Below, in pieces: positions 7,203-63,898 of a stretch of DNA of 64,000 nt. Source of the DNA: Phallusia mammillata (taxonomy: Eukaryota). The stretch lies in assembly GCA_965637545.1 (NCBI GenBank), contig OZ281494.1, positions 1,674,001 through 1,738,000 on the forward strand, given 5' to 3'. The position numbers and the translations under genes are program-made. The notes beneath the pieces are model-generated. The model had not been told where the DNA came from. It saw only the letters and a list, made by a program, of their open reading frames with translations, and did not search any database. Within the stretch, counting starts at the first letter, position 1, and each line of letters opens with the position of its first letter.

Positions 7203-7248
7203 TTGCTCTGATGAAGCCCTACCGTTCTGGTGGGCGAAACGTTAGCGA
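7203..7248 (+). ncRNA. Minimal type I hammerhead ribozyme in the 3' pLTR (intact core)
   Basis: TTGCT-CTGATGA-A-GCCC-TACCGTTCTGGT-GGGC-GAAA-CGTT-AGCGA: CUGAUGA box, stem II hairpin, GAAA box, palindromic AACGTT in place of stem III, stem I GCT/AGC. Minimal hammerheads are known from PLE pLTRs. Confidence 0.85.
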
Positions 7249-8273: not shown

Positions 8274-11200
8274 TCACCCCCTAAAAGTTTGTCCTGTTAC
8301 TTGTGAATCAGACCCAACATCAGCTTCACGCTTGCACGGTAAAACTTCCTTTCTGACGTCATCATCAATGACACAATACAACAGAAAGACGACGATACCC
8401 TGCGATCCGTTAACCAAGCTGTGGATGTACATGAACACCTCGTTCGAAATCTCGTTGCCAATTCCTGCAGAAAAGAAAGGGTGCTTAACATTTATTGATG
8501 TAACTTTACATTGATGTAATTAATTTGTTAGTAATTCGAAACACACAATGTACAATTATTACCTGTGAAAAAAGCAAAAATCCAAGTTCCACCAAGCATG
8601 AGGAAGAGTAAGATGAAAGACTTTGATGCTCTTAATGCATCTCCTGTCCCCGGATCTTCTCCTCCGTTTCGCATCCGTCTCGAGTTCAGCATCACATGTG
8701 TTGTCTTCAGGATAATGATCAGGTTGATGAAGAGGACAAGAGCAAGAGGAGCGATGACCGTTGTGTAGAAGATCGGAGTACCGGGCACCAACCAGCATCG
8801 GTCGTATTTTTGAACCTGTATCAATTGGTTACACTGCTCGTTTAGCGGTTGGGGCTTCATGTAGATTCCCATGACAAACCCCACAGTAGTAGATATTCCC
8901 ACTAATAGAGCGGGAATAAGCCAGCCAGTGAGCATAAAAACCCTGAGACGTTTCGTTGAATCCTGAGTTTGAAACTCGACTGGAAAGGAAGTGGCCATAA
9001 ACAGACGAATTCCTTCGACCAGAGACCACATTCCTGAAACAAACGATTCAATCGATCACAAACAAATCTTTTAAGGGTTGAATTATGTGGTTAGTTATTT
9101 ACCTGCACAGAGTAATAAATATTGATTGGCTGCTGTGTGAATCACGCATGGAATCTCGTGCATCACGGCAAGATCATGGGATAGGTTGACTGCGTGGAAG
9201 AGTAGCAGAGCCATTGACAAGCTGATTTGAACCGGAACCCGATCAATGTTTTGTTTCGATTTGTATAGGATTACTATGGTGGCAATCAGAAATACGACTG
9301 ATGTTGATTCTGTGGCGTAAGATGTGATCTGAAATAAAATATTGCGTAATCATGTGCTGTTTGTTAAGATGACATTTGAATCTTTAAACTTTACATTCTA
9401 AAATAAAATATTTCTTAATAGTGAGCCATTCTTTAAATTACTTATTTGAATCTTTACCTTGATGCCCTTTGGTATGGTGGTGGTCTCGACAGCCAGCAGA
9501 ACAGTGAACAAGGTGAGATGGTGGCATTTGCAAGTGACGTTGCCTGTTACGTCATCAGTAATTGTGGCGCAACCACGATCTGAATACTTATCTTCAACTC
9601 TGTCGAAGTAGAGACAAATTGGTTTCATTTTGTTGATAATAAGGTTTGCATTGCTGATCTTTCCCAATTTGATTTTCTTGCAGACGGATTCTAGTGACAT
9701 TGGAGATACGGTGAAATTTGCTTTTCCTTGAAGATGATTGTTTTCCTCGTTGCTGGTTGAATGGTTGCTGGATATGGGTTCAAAGCTATCTGCATTGCGA
9801 CCAACAATATTAATAAAGGTGGTGTTCAATGCAGCTTCATACTTTGTTGTTGTCAGGGAGCCGACTTTGAGAGGTTGAATCTGTGCTGTTTCGGTTGTGT
9901 TTATCTGAAAGACATACACATCAATAACGATGCGTTGAACCCCGTTTGTCTGCAATGAGATGTCAATCTTAGATGATCCCAGCTGTATAGTCGAGTTATA
10001 TGTCTCTTGGTTGATGCTGGTAACAACGATGTACAGTTGAGCTTCTCCGTAATCATAAGTTGTTCCGTTGGTTTCAGCATGATTTTGGGAAAATATTCCA
10101 ATTTGTTTTGCAATGTTTTTGATTTCTCCAGTATTTGCTAAATTCTTATTTCGGAATCGTTGGAGGAATGACAGGGCTGCAAAAAACAACTCCGTTAAAA
10201 AATATATATAACGACTAGCTCGTTACTTTTATAAGACAAACACTTTTTTATCCTTAACTGCAAAACGTGCTTATACTACAATTCATTGTCACTTGTTGAG
10301 TCATTTCACATCAGAAAAAGATGTACATTAGGTATGGACAAAAGTATTTGAAAAAGGATTGAAAGCTGCATTTTTAATATTCTTTACACCAGGAAATCTT
10401 TTGTGTTTCAGTTCATGCATATTAGAACACTCACGTTTCACTTGACAAGCATAGTAAGCCGGTTCACCACTACAGTTCATGCTTGACTGCTTCCATCCGA
10501 TCCCATAATGCAACATTCCCTGCTGGCAAGATGTGACGTTGGAAACAGGAAAGTTTGCCGGAGATCCATCGCTCCAATACCAACCATTCAACGACGTGTT
10601 GTAACGAGCTCCAACAAACACTTTAACTTCTAGAAAGAAGGTAAATGCTTTTTGACATGAGAGCAGATGTATTACTATTTAAGATCAAACGCTCACTTGG
10701 TGCCAGGAATGATCCATCATATGTAGTAAAGTTTTCAAACGATTCATTGACACTTCGCAGTTTGCTTCCATACATTTCACCGATGCTTCTGTAGCTGAAT
10801 ATTTCGTGTTGACGTTTCCTTGATTTAGCGTCGAAAAACAAGGAATATCGTAGGTTCCATCCCGCATATATTTGTATGTGAGATACAAGACATTAAATAA
10901 AAAAGATTTTGTATCAAAACCTGACAAACCCAAAACATAAACTGTACATAATATGTTTTGGCAATAATATATTTTTGTGGTCCAACAAACTTTACTGAGG
11001 TAATAAAAACCAACCGGCCCAATCTCCATGAGGTAAAAGTCCGTCACAATTTCTTCCAATAGACACAAACCACTTTTCCATTTCAGGATTCCTGTCTTTC
11101 CAAGCCTCGCAGAAGTAAATTGGTTCCATCGCGTTTTCGAGATTCCTGTTCGAAAAAATTTAGGTTAATTGATAGTGACAAGTTTATAACTATCTGGTTT

Positions 11201-12014
11201 TAACCCTTATAGTAGTGATTTTGCTTTAATTTTTTGTTTTCTAAGGTTAACATTCAACTTTATAGACCGCTAATTCTCGAGTTGATGAAACGGGCCGCTA
11301 TGAACACATAACTGAAAAATTTTAGCCGCTGATCCAAATGATCATGAAAAGTTTATAATTATCTGCTTTTTACGTTTTGTACAAGTCGAAATACCACAGA
11401 TGTCCGAGAGATTTTGTACTTTTCCAGAAATCCACTTCAGCCGAACTACATGAGTATTTGCATCGTTCATATGTGTCCGGGTCAAAGAAAATATAAACCC
11501 GCTGCAAATCTGAAACAACGTTTTGTTGGGATAGGCAGTTAAGTCGTTTTGTTGTACTTTGTTGCCGAGCCTTAAAATTGTATACCAATATGCCAACCTT
11601 TCGTGTATTTGTCTGTCATGAGTTGAGTGAGAGTTGTGTTGATCTGTGGGTCATCAGTCATTGCAAGACTTCCACCCAGCAAAGAACATTTCTCCTGTGC
11701 AGTGTTTGCATCCACAAGATCGTCAGATAATATCAGCACACTGTCCTTCACTGCTTGCATCGTTTTGTTGCAACCTGGAAAACACCTCGTTGTTGCACTG
11801 TTTTCTGCAATTGTTTTGTCTAATAAGTTGTTAAACGCAACACCAGGCTTGAGTTCGGACAGTTGGCACAATTAATTGCAAAATTGGCAAAATTAAATTG
11901 CCCAACAAACGAATATTAACACTTTTAGTGGTAACACTTACGTTTAGTTTGTCCGTATACATTGTGAATCATCAGGAACAAAATCACAAACTTGCTGATG
12001 GAAAGCCCAGTCAT
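8274..12014 (-). CDS. Adhesion GPCR with split C-type-lectin-like N-terminal module (mirror copy of 19978-23718)
   Basis: Reverse complement of the + strand gene in the right arm; the ORF translations are identical. Confidence 0.85.
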
Positions 12015-12396
12015 CACGTTTGTCACAATGATCACATATACGGCCACTTTCTACTTGCCATTACTATTTGCTGCAGAAGTAGAAGACACGTTGTGTTTCA
12101 CTGGCTGCAATTATAACATAAACTTTGAGCTCACAGGTGGGCTGTGGACGTTTCAGTCTGTCCTGACGCTTTGGTGTGCTGTATTCTGGCTATAGCCAAT
12201 ACGGTCAATGTATTGTAACCAGCTGAACCGATTCGCCCTCATTTTCTCGCAATACTGCTTTGCTTCCGGACCAAGTGAACACAAGTGAACTGGACATTGT
12301 CTGTGCTTAAACTTTGTAACCAATGTAAGTTATTTTACAACAGGGAAGCTAAAATGCACAACACTTGATTTAAAATCTCCATGCAATGTGCTATGC

Positions 12397-13725: not shown

Positions 13726-13925
13726 NNNNNNNNNNNNNNNNNNNNNNNNNNNNNNNNNNNNNNNNNNNNNNNNNNNNNNNNNNNNNNNNNNNNNNNNNNN
13801 NNNNNNNNNNNNNNNNNNNNNNNNNNNNNNNNNNNNNNNNNNNNNNNNNNNNNNNNNNNNNNNNNNNNNNNNNNNNNNNNNNNNNNNNNNNNNNNNNNNN
13901 NNNNNNNNNNNNNNNNNNNNNNNNN
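13726..13925. other. Assembly gap, exactly 200 N
   Basis: Run of N. The round length suggests a scaffolding placeholder rather than a measured gap. Confidence 0.98.
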
Positions 13926-17508: not shown

Positions 17509-18480
17509 AAACTTTTCCGTTTCATAGGATACAACTTGCCAGCATGGAGCGTTGTATTATGGGATTGGATGGGAGAAGTCAAGCATGGAGTGCAGTGGGG
17601 AACCGGCTTGCCATGCTTTTCAAGTGAAACGTGAGTATTCTATATACGTGTACTAATATACAAAAGATTCCCTAGTGTAGTGAATTTTAAAAACGCTACC
17701 TAAAATCTTTCGTAGCCATTTCTTTCAATGCCTCATTGCGCTGTTTTCTTATGGTAAAATTACTGAACGAATGACAATGAAGTGTAGTATAAGTTCGATT
17801 TGCAGTTAAAGATGAAAAAGTGTTTGTCTTATCACAGTATCGAGAACCAGTACTTTTTTTGACGGTACTGTTTTTTGCAGCCCTGTTATTTCTCCAACAT
17901 TTGGGAAATAAGAATTTAGCAACTACTGGAGAAATAAAAACATTGAAAAACAAATTGGATTTTTTCCCTAAAATCATGCTGAAACCGACGGAGTTGCAAG
18001 TAGGGCCGGGTTCGGGTTCGGGCCTGGTTCGGAATCGGAAAACAGGCTCAAAACGGACCCGACTTGACGTTCCGTGTCCGCCATTGTTTTTTAAATAAAA
18101 TCACTTAGCTAAGTAACAATTCTCTGGCTTTGACCTCATGCCCACCCTCCTCTAAAACGTATCGTTTTACCCATTGTCTACTATTGTTCAATGTGTTCGT
18201 TGTCTTTCTCTTTTTTCTTTCTCATCCTTTGTTGCAAGGCTTTCGTGGGTAGGCCTGTCAATCAAAATTTCGGGCCCAAACGGGCTTTGCAAAAACGTTT
18301 CGGGTTCGGGCCGGGCTTCGGGCTTCGGGCTTATACATTCGGGTTCGGGCCAGTCTTCGGGCTTATACATTCGGGTTCGGGCCGGATTCGGTCTCAGATT
18401 TCGGGCCCGCTTGCAACTCTGGACGGAACCACTTATGATTACGGAAAAGCTGTACATCGTTGCTACCAACATAACCGCCT
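17509..18480 (+). pseudogene. Decayed fragment of a further CTL-aGPCR paralog (end of lectin exon E, intron, start of GAIN exon)
   Basis: 17509-17630 matches exon E including its GTGAG donor, and the intron is homologous. 17881 onward matches the GAIN exon with a 1-nt deletion; it is interrupted at 17991-18421 and resumes with GACGGAACCACTTATGATTACGG. Confidence 0.85.
17991..18421. mobile_element. MITE-like insertion with TTCGGG-rich internal repeats
   Basis: Inverted termini GAGTTGCAAG (17991-18000) / CTTGCAACTC (18410-18419). It interrupts a recognisable exon. A related short copy lies at 52474-52558 and a mirror part at 13571-13725. Confidence 0.65.
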
Positions 18481-18971
18481 ATTGCTTGCTCGGTGTTTTT
18501 TTTACGTTAGCCGCTCCTACACGTTATAGGAATAAAACAAAACAAATGGAGGATGAGATATACAGACAGCTTTGAGTCATGCTTTGCAACGCATTGCTCT
18601 TTCTTTCAGACGAAGCTGTTCATTTTTACAACATACAGAAAACTCCATCAAAGCTAATCAACAATGTGTTATGAGTCAGTAATCAGTGTCGGTTGTGCAG
18701 ATGTGCAGTGGGTAGTCGTACCTGTTCTAGGGTTAAAATCTTGACGCACAGGAAGCAGAAGTAGATCTGTGTAAATGGTTCCCTACTTCATGATTTAAAT
18801 AACAGCGCCAAGAAAATAAAAAGCGACATAGTTTACAGTTCGGCACATGCCATCAGCAGTGTTATGAAGGGATACATCAGGTACACGCGTTTGTATACAG
18901 TTGGGTCACATAACAAATGTGCTAAGCAAGCGTAGCGTAAGACGGTGTGTTGTATATTGCTTTGCATAGCA

Positions 18972-19595
18972 CAGGTGTGGCCAGACCTGCTTCACGCTCG
19001 AGCCATATCACATAACTTAGTTTTAGAAGAGCCGCAACACAAAAAAAATCAAAAAACGAATTCATTTAATCACCACGAAGCATAAGCTATCAAATAATGA
19101 TTATTGTTGTATGGTGATACTGTGAGTCTCCACCTGGGCTGCAAGGTGTTTGAAATTTGGCTGATATAATGGAAAAGTTTTTGTGTTTAGCTTCGTAATG
19201 ACGTTTGAAGTCACTAGTTTTGTAATGATTGAACAAAGCTTGACAGATAAGACACACAGGTTTAAACTTTGCAGTTATTGCTAGTAGAAGCTGCAATAGA
19301 AATGTAAAGTGCTTTTAATGTCAGCCCTGACTTACAGCTTAAATCTAAAAATATATTTGACTATAATGCACAAGTTATAGCACACTTTTGTACAAAAATG
19401 TTCTTTTCGCCTGGTTTCGGAATGTACATTGGTTATGACAAACAGTCAGTCTATTGTTAATACGTGATAAAATGCATTGTTTTATCAACTGGTCAAACAA
19501 CTGCAAGATGGGAATGCATGTGCAGCATCAAAGAGCCGCAATCAAAGGCTCAATGAGCCGCATGCGGCTCGAGAGCCGCAGTTTGGCCACCCCTG
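18972..19595 (-). mobile_element. hAT element, mirror of 12397-13020
   Basis: Reverse complement of 12397-13020. Confidence 0.9.
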
Positions 19596-19977
19596 GCATA
19601 GCACATTGCATGGAGATTTTAAATCAAGTGTTGTGCATTTTAGCTTCCCTGTTGTAAAATAACTTACATTGGTTACAAAGTTTAAGCACAGACAATGTCC
19701 AGTTCACTTGTGTTCACTTGGTCCGGAAGCAAAGCAGTATTGCGAGAAAATGAGGGCGAATCGGTTCAGCTGGTTACAATACATTGACCGTATTGGCTAT
19801 AGCCAGAATACAGCACACCAAAGCGTCAGGACAGACTGAAACGTCCACAGCCCACCTGTGAGCTCAAAGTTTATGTTATAATTGCAGCCAGTGAAACACA
19901 ACGTGTCTTCTACTTCTGCAGCAAATAGTAATGGCAAGTAGAAAGTGGCCGTATATGTGATCATTGTGACAAACGTG

Positions 19978-22900
19978 ATGACTGGGCTTTCCATCAGCAA
20001 GTTTGTGATTTTGTTCCTGATGATTCACAATGTATACGGACAAACTAAACGTAAGTGTTACCACTAAAAGTGTTAATATTCGTTTGTTGGGCAATTTAAT
20101 TTTGCCAATTTTGCAATTAATTGTGCCAACTGTCCGAACTCAAGCCTGGTGTTGCGTTTAACAACTTATTAGACAAAACAATTGCAGAAAACAGTGCAAC
20201 AACGAGGTGTTTTCCAGGTTGCAACAAAACGATGCAAGCAGTGAAGGACAGTGTGCTGATATTATCTGACGATCTTGTGGATGCAAACACTGCACAGGAG
20301 AAATGTTCTTTGCTGGGTGGAAGTCTTGCAATGACTGATGACCCACAGATCAACACAACTCTCACTCAACTCATGACAGACAAATACACGAAAGGTTGGC
20401 ATATTGGTATACAATTTTAAGGCTCGGCAACAAAGTACAACAAAACGACTTAACTGCCTATCCCAACAAAACGTTGTTTCAGATTTGCAGCGGGTTTATA
20501 TTTTCTTTGACCCGGACACATATGAACGATGCAAATACTCATGTAGTTCGGCTGAAGTGGATTTCTGGAAAAGTACAAAATCTCTCGGACATCTGTGGTA
20601 TTTCGACTTGTACAAAACGTAAAAAGCAGATAATTATAAACTTTTCATGATCATTTGGATCAGCGGCTAAAATTTTTCAGTTATGTGTTCATAGCGGCCC
20701 GTTTCATCAACTCGAGAATTAGCGGTCTATAAAGTTGAATGTTAACCTTAGAAAACAAAAAATTAAAGCAAAATCACTACTATAAGGGTTAAAACCAGAT
20801 AGTTATAAACTTGTCACTATCAATTAACCTAAATTTTTTCGAACAGGAATCTCGAAAACGCGATGGAACCAATTTACTTCTGCGAGGCTTGGAAAGACAG
20901 GAATCCTGAAATGGAAAAGTGGTTTGTGTCTATTGGAAGAAATTGTGACGGACTTTTACCTCATGGAGATTGGGCCGGTTGGTTTTTATTACCTCAGTAA
21001 AGTTTGTTGGACCACAAAAATATATTATTGCCAAAACATATTATGTACAGTTTATGTTTTGGGTTTGTCAGGTTTTGATACAAAATCTTTTTTATTTAAT
21101 GTCTTGTATCTCACATACAAATATATGCGGGATGGAACCTACGATATTCCTTGTTTTTCGACGCTAAATCAAGGAAACGTCAACACGAAATATTCAGCTA
21201 CAGAAGCATCGGTGAAATGTATGGAAGCAAACTGCGAAGTGTCAATGAATCGTTTGAAAACTTTACTACATATGATGGATCATTCCTGGCACCAAGTGAG
21301 CGTTTGATCTTAAATAGTAATACATCTGCTCTCATGTCAAAAAGCATTTACCTTCTTTCTAGAAGTTAAAGTGTTTGTTGGAGCTCGTTACAACACGTCG
21401 TTGAATGGTTGGTATTGGAGCGATGGATCTCCGGCAAACTTTCCTGTTTCCAACGTCACATCTTGCCAGCAGGGAATGTTGCATTATGGGATCGGATGGA
21501 AGCAGTCAAGCATGAACTGTAGTGGTGAACCGGCTTACTATGCTTGTCAAGTGAAACGTGAGTGTTCTAATATGCATGAACTGAAACACAAAAGATTTCC
21601 TGGTGTAAAGAATATTAAAAATGCAGCTTTCAATCCTTTTTCAAATACTTTTGTCCATACCTAATGTACATCTTTTTCTGATGTGAAATGACTCAACAAG
21701 TGACAATGAATTGTAGTATAAGCACGTTTTGCAGTTAAGGATAAAAAAGTGTTTGTCTTATAAAAGTAACGAGCTAGTCGTTATATATATTTTTTAACGG
21801 AGTTGTTTTTTGCAGCCCTGTCATTCCTCCAACGATTCCGAAATAAGAATTTAGCAAATACTGGAGAAATCAAAAACATTGCAAAACAAATTGGAATATT
21901 TTCCCAAAATCATGCTGAAACCAACGGAACAACTTATGATTACGGAGAAGCTCAACTGTACATCGTTGTTACCAGCATCAACCAAGAGACATATAACTCG
22001 ACTATACAGCTGGGATCATCTAAGATTGACATCTCATTGCAGACAAACGGGGTTCAACGCATCGTTATTGATGTGTATGTCTTTCAGATAAACACAACCG
22101 AAACAGCACAGATTCAACCTCTCAAAGTCGGCTCCCTGACAACAACAAAGTATGAAGCTGCATTGAACACCACCTTTATTAATATTGTTGGTCGCAATGC
22201 AGATAGCTTTGAACCCATATCCAGCAACCATTCAACCAGCAACGAGGAAAACAATCATCTTCAAGGAAAAGCAAATTTCACCGTATCTCCAATGTCACTA
22301 GAATCCGTCTGCAAGAAAATCAAATTGGGAAAGATCAGCAATGCAAACCTTATTATCAACAAAATGAAACCAATTTGTCTCTACTTCGACAGAGTTGAAG
22401 ATAAGTATTCAGATCGTGGTTGCGCCACAATTACTGATGACGTAACAGGCAACGTCACTTGCAAATGCCACCATCTCACCTTGTTCACTGTTCTGCTGGC
22501 TGTCGAGACCACCACCATACCAAAGGGCATCAAGGTAAAGATTCAAATAAGTAATTTAAAGAATGGCTCACTATTAAGAAATATTTTATTTTAGAATGTA
22601 AAGTTTAAAGATTCAAATGTCATCTTAACAAACAGCACATGATTACGCAATATTTTATTTCAGATCACATCTTACGCCACAGAATCAACATCAGTCGTAT
22701 TTCTGATTGCCACCATAGTAATCCTATACAAATCGAAACAAAACATTGATCGGGTTCCGGTTCAAATCAGCTTGTCAATGGCTCTGCTACTCTTCCACGC
22801 AGTCAACCTATCCCATGATCTTGCCGTGATGCACGAGATTCCATGCGTGATTCACACAGCAGCCAATCAATATTTATTACTCTGTGCAGGTAAATAACTA

Positions 22901-23718
22901 ACCACATAATTCAACCCTTAAAAGATTTGTTTGTGATCGATTGAATCGTTTGTTTCAGGAATGTGGTCTCTGGTCGAAGGAATTCGTCTGTTTATGGCCA
23001 CTTCCTTTCCAGTCGAGTTTCAAACTCAGGATTCAACGAAACGTCTCAGGGTTTTTATGCTCACTGGCTGGCTTATTCCCGCTCTATTAGTGGGAATATC
23101 TACTACTGTGGGGTTTGTCATGGGAATCTACATGAAGCCCCAACCGCTAAACGAGCAGTGTAACCAATTGATACAGGTTCAAAAATACGACCGATGCTGG
23201 TTGGTGCCCGGTACTCCGATCTTCTACACAACGGTCATCGCTCCTCTTGCTCTTGTCCTCTTCATCAACCTGATCATTATCCTGAAGACAACACATGTGA
23301 TGCTGAACTCGAGACGGATGCGAAACGGAGGAGAAGATCCGGGGACAGGAGATGCATTAAGAGCATCAAAGTCTTTCATCTTACTCTTCCTCATGCTTGG
23401 TGGAACTTGGATTTTTGCTTTTTTCACAGGTAATAATTGTACATTGTGTGTTTCGAATTACTAACAAATTAATTACATCAATGTAAAGTTACATCAATAA
23501 ATGTTAAGCACCCTTTCTTTTCTGCAGGAATTGGCAACGAGATTTCGAACGAGGTGTTCATGTACATCCACAGCTTGGTTAACGGATCGCAGGGTATCGT
23601 CGTCTTTCTGTTGTATTGTGTCATTGATGATGACGTCAGAAAGGAAGTTTTACCGTGCAAGCGTGAAGCTGATGTTGGGTCTGATTCACAAGTAACAGGA
23701 CAAACTTTTAGGGGGTGA
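19978..23718 (+). CDS. Adhesion GPCR: signal peptide, split CTL-like module, GAIN/GPS, 7TM
   Basis: Phase-compatible exons 19978-20050 (MTGLSISKFVILFLMIHNVYG), 20218-20394, 20483-20618, 20847-20977, 21131-21295 (acceptor is GG, not AG), 21363-21557, 21816-22534 (GPS CLYF...GC...CKCHHLTLF), 22664-22889, 22959-23429 (MWSLVEG), 23528-23718 (NGSQGIVVFLLYC, TGA). Confidence 0.88.
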
Positions 23719-24743
23719 CTTGCGTGAAAGTCTTTTTTGTCGATTCGTTCAAACTTGTTGAGTACTTAATACTAAGATCTTCGTCACCTTGATATAAACC
23801 TGTCTTCTATAACATTGCATGAAAGCTGCATTCATGTATTTGGCATTTTTGCTTATCTTTCTTGTACTGTACTGTAATGTGTCAATTGGCAGATGATTTA
23901 ACTCTAAAATTGAACTTTCGCGTAAATTTGTGTTTTAGTCGAAAAGAATCTGTGTTTGAAATTGGGATTACACACCTGCTGTGTCAGCAGACATTTAAAA
24001 CTTTTTGGCGCAAACAGTGTCGATTTAAATATGATGTCTAAGATGTGTTAATTCACTTTTTACAGGTAAAACTCCATTATTCTTTCAAGAATACCAAAAT
24101 TTGTTTAGTGTTATGGACTATTACACTTCGATTTCTTTTTAAATTCTGCACTCTATTATGTGTTGTGGCTTTTATTGTGCAATGTGATTTAGTAGTAATT
24201 TCACTTCAAAGCGATTCCACGTCACTGAAAAACATACCGAGTTCCTCTCATCCGACTGTCTCTGGGCAGCAGTAGACGTTAAACTCCCGGAAATTTGTCG
24301 ATAAAAACACATCAACCAACGTCATCGCCTGCAATACTGTTGTGTCATGGCAGTTCATTCTTGTCACGTCAGATGCACATTTTCCTCTTTGTACTGAGAA
24401 CCACTGCGGCGATAACATGTTACAGGCGCGTGATATTGAACGAGTGTGACGTATGTGCAATGAGACTGAGTGATTAATGTTCAAAGGTAAAGAGCATTCA
24501 TTTTTGGGCGAATTCCTTCATTTAAACATTAACTAGTGAAATAGTAATGTACACAACATCTGTAAAAATCGTTACTTTATCAAAGTTAAATCAGCAAAGA
24601 AGCATATCAGTATTTTATTTGTATTGCATTGCTCACAATGAACACTTCCACTGTATGCGGCCATAGGGTACTTAAACAAATTTGTCGTTCAACTGGTGTA
24701 ATGCTGAACAAAATACTAATTGTTGTTTTTAAGAACTTGTATT

Positions 24744-24789
24744 TCGCTAACGTTTCGCCCACCAGAACGGTAGGGCTTCATCAGAGCAA
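24744..24789 (-). ncRNA. Hammerhead ribozyme, intact core (mirror of 7203-7248)
   Basis: The plus strand reads GGGCTTCATCAGAGC, i.e. CUGAUGA on the minus strand. The copies at 27421-27466 and 32091-32136 read GGGCTTTATCAGAGC (mutant). Confidence 0.85.
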
Positions 24790-24916
24790 TGAACGATATA
24801 GTGCAAGCATAACAGGCGAAAATGCACAAGCGCAGCGGGATATAACGTAAAGTAATTATAAGAGAACAAAGGCTTATCGTGATGGGTTGAGTGTGCTATA
24901 TTGTGACAGTGCGTAA

Positions 24917-27346
24917 CTAATGCCCGATATTTGAAGAGGAAGTCGAACGCAAAATGTCGCGGAAAACTGGGCTGAGGTTTTTGCCGTCGTTACGGTTTAA
25001 AACATTTGAATTAGAATTTATGAGGCAACTTTCAAAGACCAATCTTTTCGACCAATTAGGTTCCTGTTTCAAAACTTGGGCATCGTTCCAATTTATGCGG
25101 TGATCACATACAAAAACGTGTTCGCATAAGGCGGACTTGTTAACATCCATGTTTCTGACTGCCACTTTGTGTTCCTTGAGACGTGAATTTAGATTCCGCT
25201 TAGTTTGACCAATGTATACCATATCACAATCACGGCAAGGGAACTGGTAAACAACTCCTGTACGATGTTGTGGTATAGTGGCATCTTTTGGTTTTGGTAG
25301 TAACTGCCCAATAGTTTTAAAAGGTTTCATTGCCACTTTTACCCCAGCATCATTCAGGATACGTTTTAGGCGCTCCGATACACCCTGGACATACGGTAAG
25401 CATGTGAATGATTTAAACTGTCTGTTTTGTAAGGTGGTTGTGTTATGGGTCAAGTGGTGTAAGTTACGCGGGAAACCGTTATTCTTTAACACGCGTGCAA
25501 TATTTTTGCATTCGTGTTTGTGAAGAACCGTATCCTTGATGTGAGTTGTGGCTCTGTTGTAAAGCGTTTTGGCGACTGTAAGTTTTTGGTGCCGTGGATG
25601 GTGAGACGTGTAGTGTAGGTGGCGGTCAGTGTTCGTGGGCTTCTTGTATATGCCAGTGATGAGCTTTTGATCTGGCTGCCTGGTAACAGCCACATCTAAA
25701 AACGCAATGGTATCGTGTTGTTCGGTTTCCATGGTGAAAGCTATTGTAGGTGATATGGTGTTCAGGTGTGTGTGAAATGTGTAGACCATGTTTCTGTCGA
25801 TAATGACGTATGTGTCATCAACGTATCGAAGCCATAGACGTGGCGGTGTGTGGAAAGTTGCAAGTGCCTTCTGCTCTATGTGTTCCATAGTGAGATTAGC
25901 AAGAATAGCTGAAATAGGAGAGCCCATGGGTGTAACAAAGATTTGTTTGTATATTGTGTCTCTGTAAGTAAAAACTGTTGCGTTAAGGCAATTCTGTAAA
26001 GCTGTTTGTATGTGAGAAAGATCTAACCCGGTGCGTTCGTGTAGTGTAGTGTCGTGTTTGAGTTTGTCCAGAGTGATCGAAAGTGCCAAATCGGTAGGTA
26101 TGGACGTAAACAAACTGACAACATCAAAATAAACTTGGCATTCGCTTGGTTTTATATTAAAATTCGAAATAGTGTCTAAAAAATCCAAAGAGTTTTTAAT
26201 TGTGTAACCGGAACGACCAACGATAGGCGAGATTATGGCGGCGAGAAATTTTGATAAACTATAAGTGGGTGAGTTTTCGAAAGAAACAATAGGTCGCAAA
26301 GGGATATTATCCTTATGAATCTTCGGCAAACCGTAAAACTTTGGAAGAAGTCCGTCTGTGCTTCTGAGGTGACGGTATTCTTGGTCGGTGAGACAGTTGT
26401 TCGTGCGTAGTTTCCAAATGAACTTGTTTAGTTCCCGTTCTATGCCCTTGAGTGGATTTTTTGTCAATCGTAGGTATACCGAGCTGTCGTCCAAAAGTGC
26501 TTGTGCCTTGTGTTCATATTGTTTCCTATCCATAACCACTGTGCAATTTCCTTTGTCCGCTTTCAAGATTGTCACCGATTCATCCTTTCGCAGATCACTT
26601 AGGGCGCGGGTCTCTTCCGGAGACAAATTTGGCTTGGGTGCCGTGGATTTCTTCAAAACCTGCGCAATCCGACTCCTAGCCAAATCCGCGGCAGCTGCAT
26701 CGTCGTTAGCGAGCCCTAGTAGACCCGCCTCTGCGGCACCAACCATTTCTAGGACAGGAACCTTCTTGGGTGCAATTGCGAAACCGTGGCCTTTTTCCAA
26801 AACACTGTGTTCCGCTTTGGTTAGAATCTTAGAAGAAACGTTGTTGACCCATCTTTGTTTGCTGAAGTTTTTACCTTTCCTCGTAGTTTTTGTCTGCCGA
26901 TCTTTTTGTAGCGCCTGGAGCTTCTTTTCATGTACTATGGAACATCCGGTTGTGGTCGACCATTGACGTTTTGTAGCATATTGTTCCAACACATCCATAC
27001 ATTGCTGTGTTAAAACCTTCGTGAGTTGTAGTTTTAAGTCTTTGCAGAGTAGTTTGAGTTGTCCGATTTTTTGATGCGAATCGGTTATTCTGTCTTTGAG
27101 CAGTGTCCAGCAACACTTGCGAACTATCAAAAACGACGATCTGGATTTGTCTGGAGGAGCTAGGCGGAGGCTTTTTGGTAACATATCTGCCGCTTTGCAG
27201 GCGTGATTAAACCTGATATGGCCATATTCTTTCTCGATTGTACCGACTGCCTTGACATACCTTCTGGCCGCTTGTAGACTCGCTTCGTTATAATCTCTTC
27301 TCATCATAGAAAATACTGAACAGGCGTTTCGTCCACCAGGTTGCAT
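24917..27346 (-). CDS. PLE RT + GIY-YIG ORF (mirror copy)
   Basis: Translation identical to the + strand copy. Confidence 0.93.
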   Translation of the reverse strand: MQPGGRNACSVFSMMRRDYNEASLQAARRYVKAVGTIEKEYGHIRFNHACKAADMLPKSLRLAPPDKSRSSFLIVRKCCWTLLKDRITDSHQKIGQLKLLCKDLKLQLTKVLTQQCMDVLEQYATKRQWSTTTGCSIVHEKKLQALQKDRQTKTTRKGKNFSKQRWVNNVSSKILTKAEHSVLEKGHGFAIAPKKVPVLEMVGAAEAGLLGLANDDAAAADLARSRIAQVLKKSTAPKPNLSPEETRALSDLRKDESVTILKADKGNCTVVMDRKQYEHKAQALLDDSSVYLRLTKNPLKGIERELNKFIWKLRTNNCLTDQEYRHLRSTDGLLPKFYGLPKIHKDNIPLRPIVSFENSPTYSLSKFLAAIISPIVGRSGYTIKNSLDFLDTISNFNIKPSECQVYFDVVSLFTSIPTDLALSITLDKLKHDTTLHERTGLDLSHIQTALQNCLNATVFTYRDTIYKQIFVTPMGSPISAILANLTMEHIEQKALATFHTPPRLWLRYVDDTYVIIDRNMVYTFHTHLNTISPTIAFTMETEQHDTIAFLDVAVTRQPDQKLITGIYKKPTNTDRHLHYTSHHPRHQKLTVAKTLYNRATTHIKDTVLHKHECKNIARVLKNNGFPRNLHHLTHNTTTLQNRQFKSFTCLPYVQGVSERLKRILNDAGVKVAMKPFKTIGQLLPKPKDATIPQHRTGVVYQFPCRDCDMVYIGQTKRNLNSRLKEHKVAVRNMDVNKSALCEHVFVCDHRINWNDAQVLKQEPNWSKRLVFESCLINSNSNVLNRNDGKNLSPVFRDILRSTSSSNIGH

Positions 27347-36685: not shown

Positions 36686-39600
36686 ATGATGGTGGTCAGA
36701 GCTTTGCCGTTTGTGTTTTTGTTGATCGTTCAATGCTCATCAACTGAAACAACAAGTAAAAGTTACTTTGTGGTGAAATACCGTAGAAACACTATTACAT
36801 GCTTAAATTGATTTGTCAGGTTGCGGAACGACCATGGAAGCAGAGAAAGACAGTGTTTTGATATTATCTGACGATCTTGTGGATGCAAACACTGCACAGG
36901 AGAAATGTTCTTTGCTGGGTGGAAATCTTGCAATGACTGATGACCCACAGATCAGCACAACTCTCTTTCAACTCATGACTGACAAATACACAACAGGTTT
37001 GCCAGGATGCAAAATAACACAGACTATGTTGTAACCATAGTTCGGCATAAATTTAGCTTTAAATCAACACGTTGCACGTCATTGTCGCAAATAGATTAGA
37101 GAGAAAGCAAGTAATCGTAACATTTTTAGATTTAGAGCGAGTTTATATTTATTACAATTCCACCGATCCTAAACGATACAAATACTCAAAGAATTCCACT
37201 GAAGTGGGTTGGACGAGCACAAAATCATTTGGACATCTGTGGTATTTCGACTTGTACAAAAGGTGAAAAATAAAAAACATACTTATTGATGTATATTAGT
37301 TATACAGACTTTTGTCCAACAGCAATCCTGGAATTCGTAGACAAAAAATTAACTTCTGCAATTATGAAAACAAGAGAGTCAATGACACAGAGAGGTGGAA
37401 TGTGACAATTGGAAGAGCTTGTCAGGTCCAAGGTTTGCGTTTCAAAGAGCTTAGTAACTACGAATACACTGTTGCAGCCAGGAATAATGTATCAACAAAA
37501 TTTTAGCTCTTCCGGCAGTTTTTGTTTTAATATGCCAACGTTTCGATGTCCCATACGAAACACCTTTATCAGGGTAATGACATAAATTGCAAACACAAGT
37601 TATTATAAAGCGAAAGAGCGACGAAACACACACACACAAATGGGCGGTGGTAAAAAAACGCAGTGCGCACCAATGGTCGAGTGATAACACCCAGCTCAAT
37701 GGTGCAAAAGCGACCGATATATTATCGGCATTAGAACGTCCGTTTTAACGTTCATCGTGTTGGTGTGAGAATGTATGTATGTTCCACGACTCCAGTAAAC
37801 CTCGCTTGTGAAAGTCAGTTTCTCTCGCTAACACCTGGGCAGCAGAGAATTTTATGGCGTGATTAAGGACAGTAGCATGTTGTGCCAATGCCGATTTTTA
37901 GCATATTTCTTAGCTATATCCCTTTCATGTTCTTTACGGCGCGTATTGAAAGACCTTCCCGTTTCGCCAATGTAAATCTCGTTGCACTGTTCACATGGGA
38001 TTGCGTACAATACACCCCCTTACCGCATTTGTATCAATGGAGTCTTAGGGGTGCGACAGCATCTGACGTAGGGTGTTGACTGGTTTAATCCCTACCGTAA
38101 CTACGGTCCACAACAAAATGATGGTGCCAAAATTTTATGTTAACTGTTCATATTGATACCTAAATTTACCTAAAAATAAACACACTACGGTCTGTAAAGT
38201 CTCCAACAACAACCAAAAAAATTCATAAATAGCAAAATGTTAATTAGACTGTTTTATTTAAACTGTGTAGATTTCCAATAAAACTACTATTGTGTTACTA
38301 TCTTGCTATTTATCCCGTTTTAACTAATACGTTCTTCCCTTTATCTTTATTACTGTAGTCAAACAAAAACGTTTCTACATAGGGTTGACCTGCAAGCAAA
38401 TTCGTATTGTTTTCAGGATGGCAATTCCAGTATTCCTTGTTTTCCGAAATTAACACCCTGGGGCAACAAAAACAAATATTTACCTATGGAAGATATACAT
38501 ATCCATATTCTAGCAAGTTGCGAGGTATCAATGAGCCGTATGAAACGTTTACCAAATACGAAGGATCGTTTCTGACACCAAGTGAGCGTTTGGTTTGAAA
38601 ACATACAAAGACAAAAATTTTTGATCTTGTAATTTATATTTTTAAATAACATTCGCAAATTTTGTTTAGACATTAACATTCTGCTTGGAGCTCGTTACAA
38701 CATGTCGTCGAATGGTTGGCATTGGAGCGGCGGATCTCCGGCAAACTTTTCTGTTTTCAACGTTACAACTTGCCAGCAGGGAGCGTTGCATTATGGGATC
38801 GGATGGGAGCAGTCAAGCATGAAATGCAGTGGGGAGACGGCTTACTACGCTTGCCAAGCTAAATGTAAGTAATTATAAAACAAATTTATTTAGGTCAGGT
38901 AAACATAGACATAAAATGATTCTCCTTATTTTTTAATTCGTTTTTGAACTCACTGATCCAAACAATACAATTTGTTTAAATTGCAGACTATGTTTCCTAA
39001 TATCTTTTGCGATTTCATTACTTGCTTTTTAATGATACAGTGCATGACTTTCTTGTGACGTTTCTTTAAATATTGCAGCTTTGAGTGATTTGTGTGTATA
39101 AAAAAATTACTGTGTAGGCATTTAACCTTTTTATCCACAATTAGTCAAGGCTCATGTGAAGAAATCTAAGTGCAACGCATCAACTGTGTTTGTCAGTTGG
39201 ACTGGACTTGATCAATTCATCACGAATAACAATCTTAATGCAAAGGTAATGTTTTATCACATCATTTTTTTGACATGTGTATACTATGTCTTTTTGCAAA
39301 TGTTGTATTTAGGTTGAAATTTATGTTTTGGAAATAAACAAGAGGATCTTAGCATCCTATGCAGATCAAAACACATTCGTTGAAAACGTTGGTTTTGAAA
39401 CAGAGTATACCATCACTGTAAGTAGTGTAAAAATATTCACTGAACAAGTTTTCATCCAATGAGATAATGGCTCTCAACTTGAATTTAAATTCAATTTATG
39501 TTGCTTGATGGCATAATTAAATTCGAGAGGCAACCAAACACTTTATTACCAAATGGTGTAACCAAAAATAAAACATACAATAACAGTTTACTTCCTCTTA

Positions 39601-52955: not shown

Positions 52956-55900
52956 GCTGCAACAAGACCATGCAAGCAGTAAACAACAATATATTGATAT
53001 TACCTGACGATCTTTTTGATGCAAACACTGCACAGAAGAAATGTTTTTTGCTTGGTGGAAATCTTGCAATGACTGATGACCCACAGATCAATACAACTCT
53101 CACTCAACTCATGACAGACAAATACACAACAGGTGTGAGTTGATGCAAGAGAATAACCTCAGCAACATTTACTATCCACATGTTACAACATCAATTTTGA
53201 AATCATGAAATATATTGTAGATCAGTGTTGGAAACGTGATCGTCAGTTTTTGTAGTCAACGTGGACGTTTCTGAAAAAATAATCTCATCTAAATAATGTA
53301 ATCATGAATTGTTTTAGATTTACAGCGAATCTATATCTTGTACCAAAGGAATAAAATTGATCACTACAAATACTCATATAATACGACTGAAGTGGGTTGG
53401 AAAAGCACAAAATCTCTCGGACATCTGTGGTATTTTGACTGATATAAGCGGTAACAGCTTTTAACTGATTCAAATTCGTAACCATGAAACAGTCGTTTTG
53501 TCCAACAGCAATCCTGAAAACATGGGTCAACCAATTTACTTCTGCAATTATGTAACAGGCACGAATTCGGAGAGGTGGTTTGTAACCATCGGAAGCTATT
53601 GTGGAGGTCCAGGTTTAGGCTCTACGTTTCTTAGTAACATTTTTAAGTTTAAACAAGCACACAAATTACAGAAACATTCAGGTCTATAAAAGCACCGAAA
53701 CAACATAATAAACCATAAATTTCCACACGACAGATATCATCTGTTTAATTAAATCATGTATATTTTAATTTTTTTCGTTGTTCATCATTCAGTTTTTACT
53801 TATACGTGTTATAATTTTCCTTAATTATAATTTTTATTAGCTAAGTTAAAAACAAATATTTTTACAAAGGATCAGGATGGAAATTTCGGTATTCCTTGTT
53901 TTCGGAAAACAACACAAGCAAACGTCAGAAACAAATGTTTAACTATAGAAGCGGAGGAATGATAGACATTACAAGCAAGTTGCGAGGTGTCAATGAATCG
54001 TTTGATAGATTCGATGTATATGAAGGATCGTTCCTGGCACCAGGTGAGTGTTTGGTCTTACAAACAACAAACGACAAGGTTGCATCAATAGTGTTTGCAG
54101 CTGTGTTTTAGATAATAACGTTTTCATTGGAGCTCGTTACAACACTTCGTTGCATGGTTGGTATTGGAGCGACGGATCTCAAGCAAACTTTCCCGTTTCC
54201 AACGTTACAACTTGCCAACAGGGAGCGTTGCATTATGGGATCGAATGGGAGCAGTCAAGCATGAACTGCAGTGGTGAAGTGGCTTACTACGCTTGCCAAG
54301 TACGATGTGAGTAATTAAATTTACAATACTTTTTTCCCTATTGGACTCTTACCCATATAATTTATTTTTTGTCAATGCTACTGTGGAGAAAATCATATGC
54401 AATGCTTCAACTGTGGTGGTCAGTTGGACTGGACTAGATCAGATCATCGAAGTCAATAATCTATTAGCAGAGGTAACACATAATTATACCACCAAGCCGA
54501 GCGTTTGGTGTTCTGCGGCGAAGTTTCCAACATTAAGATGCTTCGGCAATTGCGGTTGCTAAAAATCTTTCCTAGAAAGTTAGGTGCATGACCCTGCAAT
54601 AAACACATAGTTAGCGCTGTGAGCACTGGAGGGTGTTTCGCCTGTCTCGGTATTGGCTTTATTGATAGCAAAGCAGCATGGTGGCAGGAACTTGGCCGAA
54701 TGGCCTGGCGCGCCTGACCCATATACAGATATATAAAAAAATCCTGACCTGAATTCGTCCCCGGGAGTGTCCTGAGTTCGAACCCCGTGAAGTTGAAAAA
54801 AAAATGCAAAGCAGCATGGTGGTTTAATTTCATATTTGTCGCTTCAGTACCGAGTAAATCTATTAAATTGAGACTAAAGTCCAGCATGCAAGTTCTGCGG
54901 AAAAGGTTTGGCACAAGATGCTTCGACAATATGTGACATGTGAAGTGGCTACACCAATAGTTTTAATACCTTTTTAGGGTAGTTTTTGACAAATGTCGTT
55001 TTTAGGTTGAAATTTATGTTTCGAAACTGAACGAAAGAATCTTGGCACCATATTTAGATCTGTCGACAACGATTGGAAACTTAAATTTCGCAACAGAATA
55101 TAGTTTTGAGGTAACGTGTGTTTTATTGACAATAACGTTTTTTTATTTGCAATTGGTCAAGTTTGATTTAGTTGTCACATCGATGGCTGATTAAGTGTTG
55201 TTTTTGAGCTGCAACGTACTATTGTAATTTACTAAAAGATGGGAATATAACTGATACGAAAATAGTTTTAAAATGATTTGATCAAATTAGGTTTGGAAAA
55301 CATAAAACACTTGCATGGGAAGTCGATTAATTTTATCACACAAAATTCACCAACAGATCACTACAATGCTTACCGGATGCCTAAACGCTAACGTCTCAAC
55401 ATCCAAATCAGTGACAACTTTTGGAAATCCCCCATCGAGTTGCTATCCTCCACGTAAGCGAACAAGCTAGAAGTGGAATTTGAATTTAAATTCTTAACAA
55501 CTATTATTGCAGTAAATGCGACTGCAGAGACATTTCCATGCACGCTTCATCGGTGCTTGTCAGTTGGACTGGACTTGATCAATTCATCTACGAAAATGAT
55601 CCAATTGCACAGGTTTAAATCAAGTTTGCGTTAGTTAAACGACCATTCATAACGAAACTTCATGCAGGTCGAGATGAAAATTGAAGGTTTAAACGAAACA
55701 ATCTCTGTTCTGTATTTTGACGATTCCATTATATTAGAAGATCTTATTCACTCGACGTTCTATGAAATTCGGGTAAACAAATATTTTTTCGTGAGGTAAT
55801 TGTTCAAGAATAACATGCGGGGCACTGTGTGAATAAAAATCTACACTTTTTAAACATGACATTTTTTTACTTAAATTCTGTTTTTTAGGTCACAGCAATT

Positions 55901-63080: not shown

Positions 63081-63898
63081 ATGATGACCAGAGGAGTGGC
63101 GATTGTGATGATTTTGATTGCTCAATGGTCATCAGCCCTGCCAAAAAGTAAGATGTTCTCTGCTAAAACAAAAGGTAGAAACACCATTATATTCTTCGCA
63201 ACTTGTTTATAAGGTTGCAACAAAACTTTTCAAGCAGTGAAGGACAGTGTGTTGATGTTATCTGATGATCTTGTGGATGCAAACACTGCACAGGAGATAT
63301 GTTCTTTGCTCGGTGGAAATCTTGCAATGACTGATGACCCACAGATCAACGCAACTCTCACTCAAATCATGACAGACAAATATACATCAGGTTTGAGTGT
63401 GCACTTAAAGAGTGGCAATTTTAACATTGCAGAAAAAAAGATGTGAAACAAAATTTACTTCACACATATTAACTTATTAACATCTGTAATAATTTCTAAA
63501 TCAGTTAAGTGTTGCACAACTCAAATCGATTATGTCGTTAAATTATTCGGCAATTGACCTGCAAAATTCGCATGTACACTAATCAATTGCTTGCTGTTTT
63601 AGAATTGCAGAGGGTTTATATTTTTTACGCAACAATAGAGAATGAACGATACAAATACTCAAAGAATCCGGCTGAGTTGGGCTGGACGAGCACAAAATCT
63701 CTGGGACATCTGTGGTATTTCGACTTGTATAAATGGTAACAAGTTTCAACAGAAACAAACTCGTTAGCATAAAATAATTCGTTTTGTTCAACAGTAATCC
63801 TAAAAACACGATACAAACAGTATACTTCTGCAATTATGTAAATGGCATGGACACCGAAAGATGGTTTGTGACCATCGGAACAAATTGTGAAGGCGGAG
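63081..63898 (+). CDS. 5' part of another CTL-module gene (continues beyond the window; C-terminal tail unknown)
   Basis: Intact phase-compatible exons 63081-63147 (signal peptide MMTRGVAIVMILIAQWSSALP), 63214-63390 (A), 63603-63735 (B), 63795-63898 (C). Confidence 0.85.

What the first reader, a model, noticed from the sequence alone, without database searches (positions are those of the whole stretch)
20218..21557. C-type-lectin-like domain split by a three-exon variable insert of about 135-145 aa
Seen: exon A encodes a CTLD N-half (C...[14 protein letters not shown]..D). Exon E encodes the C-half (VFVGARYN...WYWSDGS...C...W...C...YYAC), supplying the four canonical Cys between them. Exons B-D (432 nt in the GPCR, 408 nt in the PTP) sit between the predicted alpha2 helix and beta2 strand. 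A and E are well conserved among paralogs. Exon C varies in sequence and length (131, 110, 104, 104 nt), e.g. CEAWKDRNPEMEKWFVSIGRNC vs [22 protein letters not shown] vs CNYVTGTNSERWFVTIGSYC, around fixed residues ([10 protein letters not shown], two Cys, SKLR, GSFLxP). No EPN/QPD/WND motifs, so Ca-dependent sugar binding is unlikely. Inference: the insert is a separately folded, diversifying recognition domain displayed on a lectin scaffold. I do not recognise this architecture.
Basis: partly seen in the sequence, partly recalled or inferred. Interest (0 to 1): 0.78.

Follow-up and report, generated by a model that had tools for sequence, protein, structure and literature searches.

The report
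Lectin-like domain split by insert
In this sea-squirt receptor gene cluster, two or three extra exons place a conserved piece of about 135 residues, of unknown fold, in the middle of a natural-killer-receptor-type lectin-like domain; I found no description of this layout, and the idea that the piece is under diversifying selection is not supported.

Summary
Exons A (20218-20394) and E (21363-21557) are the N- and C-halves of one C-type lectin-like domain (CTLD). Profiles of each half retrieve almost only CTLDs from the PDB. In the nearest full-length relative (Clavelina), NKR-P1A residues 5-62 and 65-89 align on either side of a 132-residue gap, at the alpha2/beta2 junction.

Exons B-D (136+131+165 = 432 nt) fill that gap. 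Spliced RNA contigs of paralogs include them. The same exon order occurs in a second ascidian (Clavelina) and in contigs of unidentified origin from metagenome assemblies.

The module starts and ends in intron phase 1. It sits on an adhesion GPCR, a receptor tyrosine phosphatase and a short single-pass protein.

- Both structure predictions failed (pLDDT 42 and 38), so an autonomous fold is not shown.
- The only family hint is a sub-threshold match to Pfam DUF7023.
- dN/dS is below 1 in every exon, including the variable Cys-Cys loop. B-D differ more than A/E at synonymous sites too, so there is no excess of amino-acid change.

In this GPCR copy exon D has GG instead of AG at its acceptor, and the copy at 10435-11774 is an exact mirror duplicate next to an assembly gap. 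Other first-stage notes of this scan describe the same family elsewhere on this chromosome.

The parts
19978..20050 (+). Exon 1 of the GPCR copy: start codon and signal peptide (MTGLSISKFVILFLMIHNVYG/QTK). It ends in phase 1 with a GTAAGT donor.
   Evidence: Read from the sequence. The frame joins exon A in phase 1. Signal-peptide character is inferred from the hydrophobic core.
20218..20394 (+). Exon A, 177 nt, phase 1-1. CTLD N-half: beta1, alpha1 with Cys C1, GGxLA, alpha2.
   Evidence: The exon A profile hits CTLD N-halves in the PDB. RNA contigs start or stop matching at 20218.
20483..20618 (+). Exon B, 136 nt, phase 1-2. First insert exon (DLQRVYIFF ... [10 protein letters not shown]).
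   Evidence: A to B is joined in a paralog RNA contig (X5 record 19).
20847..20977 (+). Exon C, 131 nt, phase 2-1. Insert exon with two conserved Cys around a loop of variable length (PIYFC-x(6-13)-[KR]W-x-V-x(3-4)-C).
   Evidence: B to C is joined in a paralog RNA contig (X3 record 9). The donor G|GTTGGT is homologous to the donors of copies 3-5.
21131..21295 (+). Exon D, 165 nt, phase 1-1. Third insert exon (GW..YSLF ... SKLR ... GSFLAP). In this copy the acceptor dinucleotide is GG, not AG.
   Evidence: The letters are confirmed by a DNA contig (X1 record 3). D to E is joined in paralog RNA contigs (X3 record 10, X5 record 21).
21363..21557 (+). Exon E, 195 nt, phase 1-1. CTLD C-half: beta2 (VFVGARYN), WYWSDGS, Cys C2, C3, C4.
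   Evidence: The profile hits 48 CTLDs among 49 PDB matches. RNA contigs leave the stretch at 21552-21557 into the next exon of paralogs.
21816..22549 (+). Next exon of the same gene: stalk and GPS motif (CKCHHLT/LFTVLL). The exon end is approximate.
   Evidence: Pfam GPS, E 5.9e-8, 33.5 bits against a cut-off of 22.5. It is in frame with exon E in phase 1.
22961..23464 (+). Part of the seven-helix region of the adhesion GPCR.
   Evidence: Pfam 7tm_2, E 2.2e-17.
10435..11774 (-). Exact mirror copy of the module, inside the 13725-nt inverted duplicate 1-13725 / 18267-31991 that ends at the N gap. It is not an independent copy.
36820..38864 (+). Paralog module of the receptor tyrosine phosphatase gene: A 36820-36996, B 37130-37262, C 37323-37432, D 38417-38581, E 38670-38864. 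The transmembrane segment lies in 40730-41026 and the PTP exons in 41823-45079.
   Evidence: Pfam Y_phosphatase, E 3.6e-27 and further hits.
52956..54306 (+). Paralog module of a single-pass membrane protein gene: A 52956-53132, B from 53318, C 53509-53612, D 53876-54043, E 54112-54306. Exon B has an in-frame TGA at 53440-53442.
63214..63898 (+). Fourth paralog module, exons A-C only (A 63214-63390, B 63603-63735, C 63795-63898). It is cut by the window end.

Best explanation
**What it is.** An ascidian-specific ectodomain module: a Ca-independent, NK-receptor-like C-type lectin-like domain. Its alpha2-beta2 connection is interrupted by a conserved polypeptide of about 130-145 residues, encoded by extra exons (three in Phallusia, two in Clavelina).

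**Shown.**
- The two halves are CTLD halves.
- The insert lies exactly at the junction between them.
- It is in mature RNA of paralogs.
- It is conserved in order and motifs in Phallusia, Clavelina and contigs of unidentified origin.
- It is under purifying selection.
- The five-exon unit begins and ends in phase 1.
- It is the membrane-distal end of three receptor types: an adhesion GPCR with GPS and seven helices, a receptor tyrosine phosphatase, and a short single-pass protein.
- These genes lie in a tandem cluster and belong to a large family.

**Inferred.**
- The insert is a folded, disulfide-braced element, including a beta-hairpin whose tip loop varies in length.
- It adds to or replaces the binding surface of the lectin-like scaffold for a non-sugar ligand.
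- The module spread by exon shuffling and tandem duplication.
- The paralogs differ because they are old and diverged, not because of detectable positive selection.
For: - **CTLD halves.** Profile searches against the PDB. Colinear match to NKR-P1A with a 132-residue gap. Pfam Lectin_C at 22.9 bits against 22.6, in two stretches, on P0026. Foldseek on the poor model still lists almost only CTLDs, at E 0.25 or weaker.
- **Inclusion in RNA.** Intron-free contigs of paralogs join A-B, B-C and D-E. One 739-nt contig carries A and E with about 413 nt between them.
- **Conservation across taxa.** Clavelina proteins P0015, P0021 and P0026 carry the whole module. The Clavelina gene has the same A|B, B|C and D|E introns. 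Locus L004, from a metagenome assembly, has all five exons in order.
- **Constraint.** dN/dS is 0.18-0.56 in B and D. Aromatic and Cys positions are conserved.
- **Receptor types.** GPS and 7tm_2; Y_phosphatase; Clavelina RPTPs and a 592-aa transmembrane protein.
- **Family size.** 53-54 distinct DNA contigs differ from the window at single sites of exons A and E in one DNA run.
Against: - No confident structure: pLDDT 41.9 for the whole module and 37.7 for the insert alone. An independent fold, the hairpin and the disulfide are therefore not shown.
- The joined Phallusia model was not searched or folded. The structural and Pfam evidence for a single CTLD rests on Clavelina relatives, which are 33-48% identical in exons A and E.
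- This particular copy may not make the full module, because the exon D acceptor is GG. No RNA contig matches this copy at 99% or more.
- No ligand, expression site or function is known.
- Only three or four paralogs were available for the selection tests.
Confidence: 0.62

Rival explanations
1. B-D are optional cassette exons. The default product is an ordinary 124-residue CTLD (A joined to E), and the insert is added only in some isoforms or tissues.
For: A ends and E begins in phase 1. B+C together and D alone are also frame-neutral, so A-E, A-B-C-E, A-D-E and A-B-C-D-E all stay in frame. A plus E has the size of a normal CTLD. Exon D of this copy lacks an AG acceptor, and skipping it would keep the frame.
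Against: None of the RNA contigs shown joins A directly to E. The ones listed join A-B, B-C and D-E, and one spans A to E with about 413 nt between. The Clavelina gene models include the insert. The insert is under purifying selection. Data are few: contigs only, no read-level counts.
Confidence: 0.15
2. The insert is not an autonomous domain. It is an overgrown loop or an extension that packs onto and remodels the CTLD, so the unit is one enlarged domain.
For: AlphaFold2 finds no confident fold for the insert alone (pLDDT 37.7). The N-terminal Cys of exon A has lost its usual partner (CY is replaced by LI/LF), so it may pair with something outside the canonical CTLD. The conserved Cys count is odd: 2 in A, 2 in C, 3 in E.
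Against: The insert matches a free-standing Pfam entry, DUF7023, over profile positions 26-111 of 185, at E 1.8e-5, though below the cut-off. It is delimited exactly by introns. A length of 130-145 residues is domain-sized. The low pLDDT may only reflect the shallow alignment of 14 rows.
Confidence: 0.25
3. One reading: a hypervariable recognition domain under diversifying selection, displayed on a lectin scaffold.
For: Exon C is the least conserved exon (40-49% identity) and varies in length between two fixed Cys. The family is large and tandemly arrayed. Other first-stage notes report the same pattern 267 kb away.
Against: dN/dS is below 1 in every exon and pair. pN is below pS within the loop. 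The non-synonymous to synonymous ratio is the same in B-D as in A/E (p 0.14-0.72). The contrast comes largely from unusually low synonymous divergence in A and E.
Confidence: 0.15
4. The copy at 20218-21557 itself is a decaying member of a birth-and-death family and makes no functional full module.
For: The exon D acceptor is GG, and the letters agree with a DNA contig. No RNA contig is 99% or more identical to it. The neighbouring copy 4 has a stop in exon B. Pseudo-exons lie nearby at 17510-17632 and 50490-50564.
Against: All five exons and the GPS and 7TM exons are open. Skipping D, or pairing the in-frame GTAAAG donor at 20997 with the AG at about 21165, would keep the frame. RNA sampling was thin.
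Confidence: 0.3

Closest known systems
NK-receptor-type (group V-like) C-type lectin-like domains: CD94, NKR-P1, CLEC9A, KLRG1
   Same: These are the best sequence matches of both halves. They share the order of the canonical Cys, a short loop region without Ca/sugar motifs, and a WIGL-type beta2 followed by W-x-W-x-[DN]-G-S.
   Different: Here 130-145 residues are inserted between alpha2 and beta2. The domain is at the N-terminus of type I receptors (adhesion GPCR, RPTP) instead of the C-terminus of type II proteins. WIGL is F[IV]GAR. The partner of the N-terminal Cys is missing.
Pfam DUF7023 (PF22894)
   Same: It is the only family matching the insert: E 1.8e-5 to 2e-4 in three Clavelina proteins, over the end of exon B, exon C and the start of exon D, against profile positions 26-111 of 185.
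   Different: The match is below the gathering score (25.0 against 27 bits) and covers under half of the profile. Single Phallusia exons do not match. I could not look up which proteins define DUF7023, and no paper mentions it.
CTLD-bearing receptors with a GPS/GAIN region (polycystin-1 / sea-urchin REJ; amphioxus adhesion GPCRs with lectin domains)
   Same: A CTLD lies in the ectodomain upstream of a GPS cleavage motif and a membrane-spanning region. This comparison is from general knowledge. The Ciona GPCR survey (PMC2396169) reports 21 unclassified adhesion GPCRs in which only the GPS is recognised.
   Different: Those CTLDs are uninterrupted. The present receptor has only this module plus the stalk and GPS.
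Variable proteins of diversity-generating retroelements (Mtd, TvpA) with a C-type lectin fold
   Same: Analogy only, recalled from the literature and not tested here: a CTLD-type scaffold that tolerates inserts and displays variable residues.
   Different: They are prokaryotic or phage proteins. Their variability is made by mutagenic retrohoming at defined sites, not by a nested exon-encoded insert. No homology is claimed.
Intelectins with a nested beta-sandwich insert in the same genome
   Same: Another lectin fold in the same genome is interrupted by a multi-exon insert, and also in a multi-copy family.
   Different: The scaffold and the insert are different. I did not check those notes.

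Membership tests
C-type lectin-like domain superfamily (Pfam Lectin_C, PF00059) | Profile match at or above the curated score | tested here: met
   The Clavelina relative P0026:31-288 scores 22.9 bits against a cut-off of 22.6, in two stretches. P0021 scores 19.4 and P0015 16.1, both below the cut-off. Single Phallusia exons give no hit. The joined Phallusia model was not searched.
C-type lectin-like domain superfamily (Pfam Lectin_C, PF00059) | Four canonical Cys (C1 in alpha1, C2 in beta3, C3 after beta4, C4 in beta5) in order, with WIGL-type beta2 and W-x-W motifs | tested here: met
   The alignments show EKC in exon A, and TSC, MNC and YAC in exon E. They also show F[IV]GAR and W-x-W-S-D-G-S. 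The aligned columns agree with CD94 and NKR-P1A.
C-type lectin-like domain superfamily (Pfam Lectin_C, PF00059) | CTLD three-dimensional fold formed by both halves together | tested here: inconclusive
   The AlphaFold2 model has pLDDT 41.9. The order of secondary structure fits (beta-alpha-beta-alpha, then insert, then four strands). Foldseek lists almost only CTLDs, but at E 0.25 or weaker.
Ca-dependent carbohydrate-recognition domains (classical C-type lectins) | EPN or QPD motif plus WND motif at Ca site 2 | tested here: not met
   These motifs are absent from all copies and relatives (alignment of exon E). The loop between W-x-W-S-D-G-S and C2 is only about 12 residues.
Adhesion GPCR (this copy) | GPS motif followed by a secretin-type seven-helix region | tested here: met
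   Pfam GPS 33.5 bits (cut-off 22.5) and 7tm_2 63.6 bits (cut-off 20.6). The fold of the GAIN domain was not tested.
Receptor protein tyrosine phosphatase (copy at 36820-45079) | Ectodomain, one membrane span, tandem PTP domains | tested here: met
   Y_phosphatase matches four exon ORFs, E 3.6e-27 to 3.9e-11, covering a first domain and part of a second. A hydrophobic span lies in 40730-41026. The Clavelina relatives P0021 and P0026 have the same layout.
Pfam DUF7023 (PF22894) | Profile match at or above the curated score of 27 bits | tested here: not met
   The best score is 25.0 bits, E 1.8e-5, on P0026:88-218, covering profile positions 26-111 of 185. It is a lead to distant kinship, not membership.

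The most novel reading that the evidence does not exclude
The insert is an autonomous, DUF7023-related binding domain nested in an NK-type lectin-like scaffold. The large tandem family, wired to GPCR, phosphatase and short-tail receptors, is an ascidian-specific repertoire of variable recognition receptors (self/non-self, gamete or microbe recognition). In this reading the scaffold exons are kept uniform by exon-limited gene conversion while the insert exons keep old, distinct specificities.
Probability: 0.15. Interest if true: 0.8.

Novelty: new variant of a known kind. Interest (0 to 1): 0.52.

Why it matters
CTLDs are among the most studied recognition folds in animals. Their variation is normally confined to the loop region near the binding face. 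A domain-sized, intron-delimited insertion at the alpha2/beta2 junction is an unusual way to modify this scaffold. Here it is conserved in at least two ascidian lineages and re-used on three signalling receptor types.

It gives a name and a boundary to the unrecognised N-terminal region of some ascidian adhesion GPCRs. Surveys of Ciona found only a GPS motif in most such receptors (PMC2396169).

It also offers a test case for how nested domains arise by exon gain inside a domain.

The unexplained threefold difference in synonymous divergence between scaffold and insert exons is a concrete question about concerted evolution at exon scale.

No function is known, so the value for now is descriptive and evolutionary.

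Tried and rejected
1. **Deeper alignments for structure prediction.** MAFFT repeatedly misplaced exon-sized fragments (alignments A1, A3-A5, A8-A11). Only A6 (A, B and E fragments) and A12 (C and D fragments) were usable, and both predictions stayed below pLDDT 42.
2. **Word-index protein searches.** Searches with the Clavelina modules and with alignment A1 found nothing beyond three Clavelina proteins. The exhaustive search with exon E found only 25 proteins, mostly exon-sized ORF fragments.
3. **Internal repeat, exon B against the second half of exon D.** Rejected: hhalign probability 0.3%.
4. **Arrays of alternative exon C (Dscam-like).** Rejected: an HMM scan finds one C-like exon per copy.
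5. **The insert against PDB sequences.** No meaningful hit.
6. **Positive selection.** Not found at exon level, at loop level, or as a ratio contrast.
7. **Literature.** No paper for DUF7023 or PF22894, and none for a CTLD with a nested domain or a CTLD-bearing ascidian RPTP or GPCR.
8. **Organism check.** Exact look-up of a window ORF found nothing on record. 'Phallusia mammillata' rests on other notes of this scan.
9. **RNA for this exact copy.** None of the listed runs holds it at 99% identity or more. Only paralog transcripts were seen.
Full report
**What is at the coordinates.**

The stretch 20218-21557 holds five plus-strand exons with these boundaries:

| Exon | Coordinates | Length | Phase |
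|---|---|---|---|
| A | 20218-20394 | 177 nt | 1-1 |
| B | 20483-20618 | 136 nt | 1-2 |
| C | 20847-20977 | 131 nt | 2-1 |
| D | 21131-21295 | 165 nt | 1-1 |
| E | 21363-21557 | 195 nt | 1-1 |

- An upstream exon (19978-20050) supplies a start codon and a signal peptide in phase 1.
- Downstream exons carry a GPS motif (Pfam E 5.9e-8) and a secretin-type seven-helix region (E 2.2e-17). The gene is therefore an adhesion GPCR whose whole recognisable ectodomain is this module.
- One detail differs from a clean gene model. The acceptor of exon D is GG here, where the paralogs have AG. A DNA contig of run X1 has the same letters (record 3).

**Copies.**

tblastn finds further modules in the window:
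- 36820-38864, in a receptor tyrosine phosphatase gene. Four exon ORFs match Y_phosphatase, E 3.6e-27 and weaker.
- 52956-54306, in a single-pass membrane protein gene. Its exon B has an in-frame TGA.
- 63214-63898, cut by the window end.

The identical copy at 10435-11774 on the minus strand is not independent. Window positions 1-13725 are the exact reverse complement of 18267-31991, and this duplicate ends at the N gap.

In one DNA run, 53-54 distinct contigs differ from the window at single sites in exons A and E, against 10-15 in exon D. The family is therefore large, and A and E are its most conserved parts at the DNA level.

**Is it a split CTLD?**

Single Phallusia exons give no Pfam hit.

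- The exhaustive protein search with exon E found only 25 proteins. Among them were three full-length proteins of the ascidian Clavelina lepadiformis, two RPTPs and one 592-aa membrane protein. All three carry the complete module at their N-terminus.
- A profile of 22 exon E sequences hits 48 CTLDs among 49 PDB matches. The best is CD94 at E 2e-4, aligned to the C-terminal half of the domain.
- A profile of 8 exon A sequences hits 11 CTLDs among 12, aligned at alpha1.
- phmmer of the Clavelina module places NKR-P1A residues 5-62 on module residues 1-58, and NKR-P1A 65-89 on module residues 191-215. The two halves are contiguous in an ordinary CTLD and 132 residues apart here, exactly between alpha2 and beta2.
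- P0026 reaches Pfam Lectin_C just above the curated score, in two stretches (22.9 against 22.6 bits).
- The canonical Cys are in place, and EPN/QPD and WND are absent.

So it is a lectin-like domain of the Ca-independent, NK-receptor-like kind.

**Is the insert real and expressed?**

Runs X3-X5 are labelled RNA only as a guess. Their contigs lack the introns and break exactly at the exon edges, so they are cDNA-derived. They come from paralogs (85-99% identity), not from this copy.

- They join A to B, B to C and D to E.
- One 739-nt contig has A and E with about 413 nt between them.
- They continue from E into the next exon of the RPTP/TM-type paralogs.
- The Clavelina gene has introns at the same A|B, B|C and D|E positions, with C and D fused into one exon.
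- A locus from a metagenome assembly (L004), of unidentified origin, has all five exons in order.

The insert is thus an old, fixed part of the module.

**What the insert looks like.**

Per-exon alignments show these conserved motifs:
- In B: [DE]-L-x-R-[VI]-Y, K-Y-S and [YH]-[FV]-[DN]-L-Y.
- In C: P-[IV]-Y-F-C, then 6-13 variable residues, then [KR]-W-x-V-x(3-4)-C.
- In D: G-[WF]-x(3)-[FY], [EK]-I-F, [WY]-S-x-[KR]-L and a final hydrophobic-x-P.

Both AlphaFold2 runs failed: pLDDT 41.9 for the whole module and 37.7 for the insert alone. They agree only in drawing the two halves of exon C as strands. Foldseek on the poor model lists almost only CTLDs, but weakly.

The only family match of the insert is Pfam DUF7023. 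It is below the cut-off (25.0 against 27 bits, E 1.8e-5), on profile positions 26-111 of 185, and is consistent in all three Clavelina proteins. I could not find out what DUF7023 is.

An internal repeat (B against D) and arrays of alternative C exons were tested and rejected.

**Selection.**

Among the window's paralogs:
- dN/dS is below 1 everywhere: A 0.33-0.76, B 0.18-0.37, C 0.29-0.74, D 0.41-0.56, E 0.24-0.58.
- Inside the Cys-Cys loop, pN is still below pS.
- B-D differ more than A/E at both kinds of site. pS is 0.42-0.49 against 0.18-0.27, with Fisher p of 8e-5, 3e-4 and 0.06 for the three pairs.
- The ratio of non-synonymous to synonymous differences is not higher in B-D (p 0.14-0.72).
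- The conserved DNA tract of exon A stops at the exon edges, and the introns do not align.

The insert is therefore variable but constrained. The striking contrast is the low synonymous divergence of the scaffold exons, which I cannot explain. Candidates are exon-limited conversion, selection on synonymous sites, or different ages of the exons.

**Most likely working.**

Shown: the module is a phase 1-1 exon set that forms the membrane-distal tip of three receptor types, in Phallusia and, for two of them, in Clavelina.

Inferred:
- It spread by exon shuffling and tandem duplication.
- The lectin-like scaffold with its nested insert binds a non-sugar ligand. The variable hairpin loop of exon C contributes to specificity.
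- Binding is read out through GPS/7TM signalling, phosphatase activity, or a short tail.

Because all sub-combinations of the insert exons keep the frame, optional inclusion remains possible. It is not seen in the few RNA contigs available.

**Limits.**
- The structural argument leans on Clavelina proteins that are 33-48% identical in A and E.
- RNA evidence is from contigs of paralogs only.
- The organism name (Phallusia mammillata) comes from other notes of this scan and was not verified.
- Literature searches found no description of this architecture.

Noticed in passing
window 1-13725 and 18267-31991; N gap 13726-13925: An exact 13725-nt inverted duplicate ends at the assembly gap. It is most likely an assembly fold-back, so everything in 1-13725 is a mirror of the GPCR locus.
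   Followed up: partly
window about 26799-31990 and 31469-36660: A direct duplication with an offset of 4670 nt, shown by identical ORF sets and repeat pairs. It includes part of the retroelement below.
   Followed up: no
window 24917-27439 (-): An 840-aa ORF with reverse transcriptase (RVT_1, E 4e-7) and a GIY-YIG nuclease motif (E 5e-4). This is a Penelope-like retroelement just downstream of the GPCR gene.
   Followed up: partly
window 60096-60853: A minisatellite of a 24-nt unit, open in three frames (CTRVLVYS repeats).
   Followed up: no
window 50469-50693: The first 25 codons of an exon A-like sequence run on into an unrelated open frame. A near-identical chimeric form is present in an RNA contig of a paralog ([X4 record 15], 38).
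   Followed up: no
window 17510-17632: An exon E-like pseudo-exon with an in-frame stop lies in the unique stretch between the two arms of the inverted duplicate.
   Followed up: no
window 53440-53442: In-frame TGA in exon B of the single-pass copy (GHLWYFD*YK). Either a pseudogene or a polymorphism; not checked against reads.
   Followed up: no
window exons A and E against B-D of the copies at 20218, 36820, 52956 and 63214: Synonymous divergence is about threefold lower in the CTLD exons than in the insert exons. The conserved DNA stops at the exon edges.
   Followed up: partly
window 39126-40775, 54311-56870: Repeated exons with the motif CNAST[VL].VSWTGL lie between the module and the membrane span of the RPTP and single-pass genes. 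They have no Pfam match. Other notes of this scan call them FN3.
   Followed up: no
L004 2180-4742 and 7635-10366: Two tandem modules of the same family lie on one contig from a metagenome assembly (ERZ27241785), of unidentified origin. For the upstream one only exons D and E were found.
   Followed up: partly
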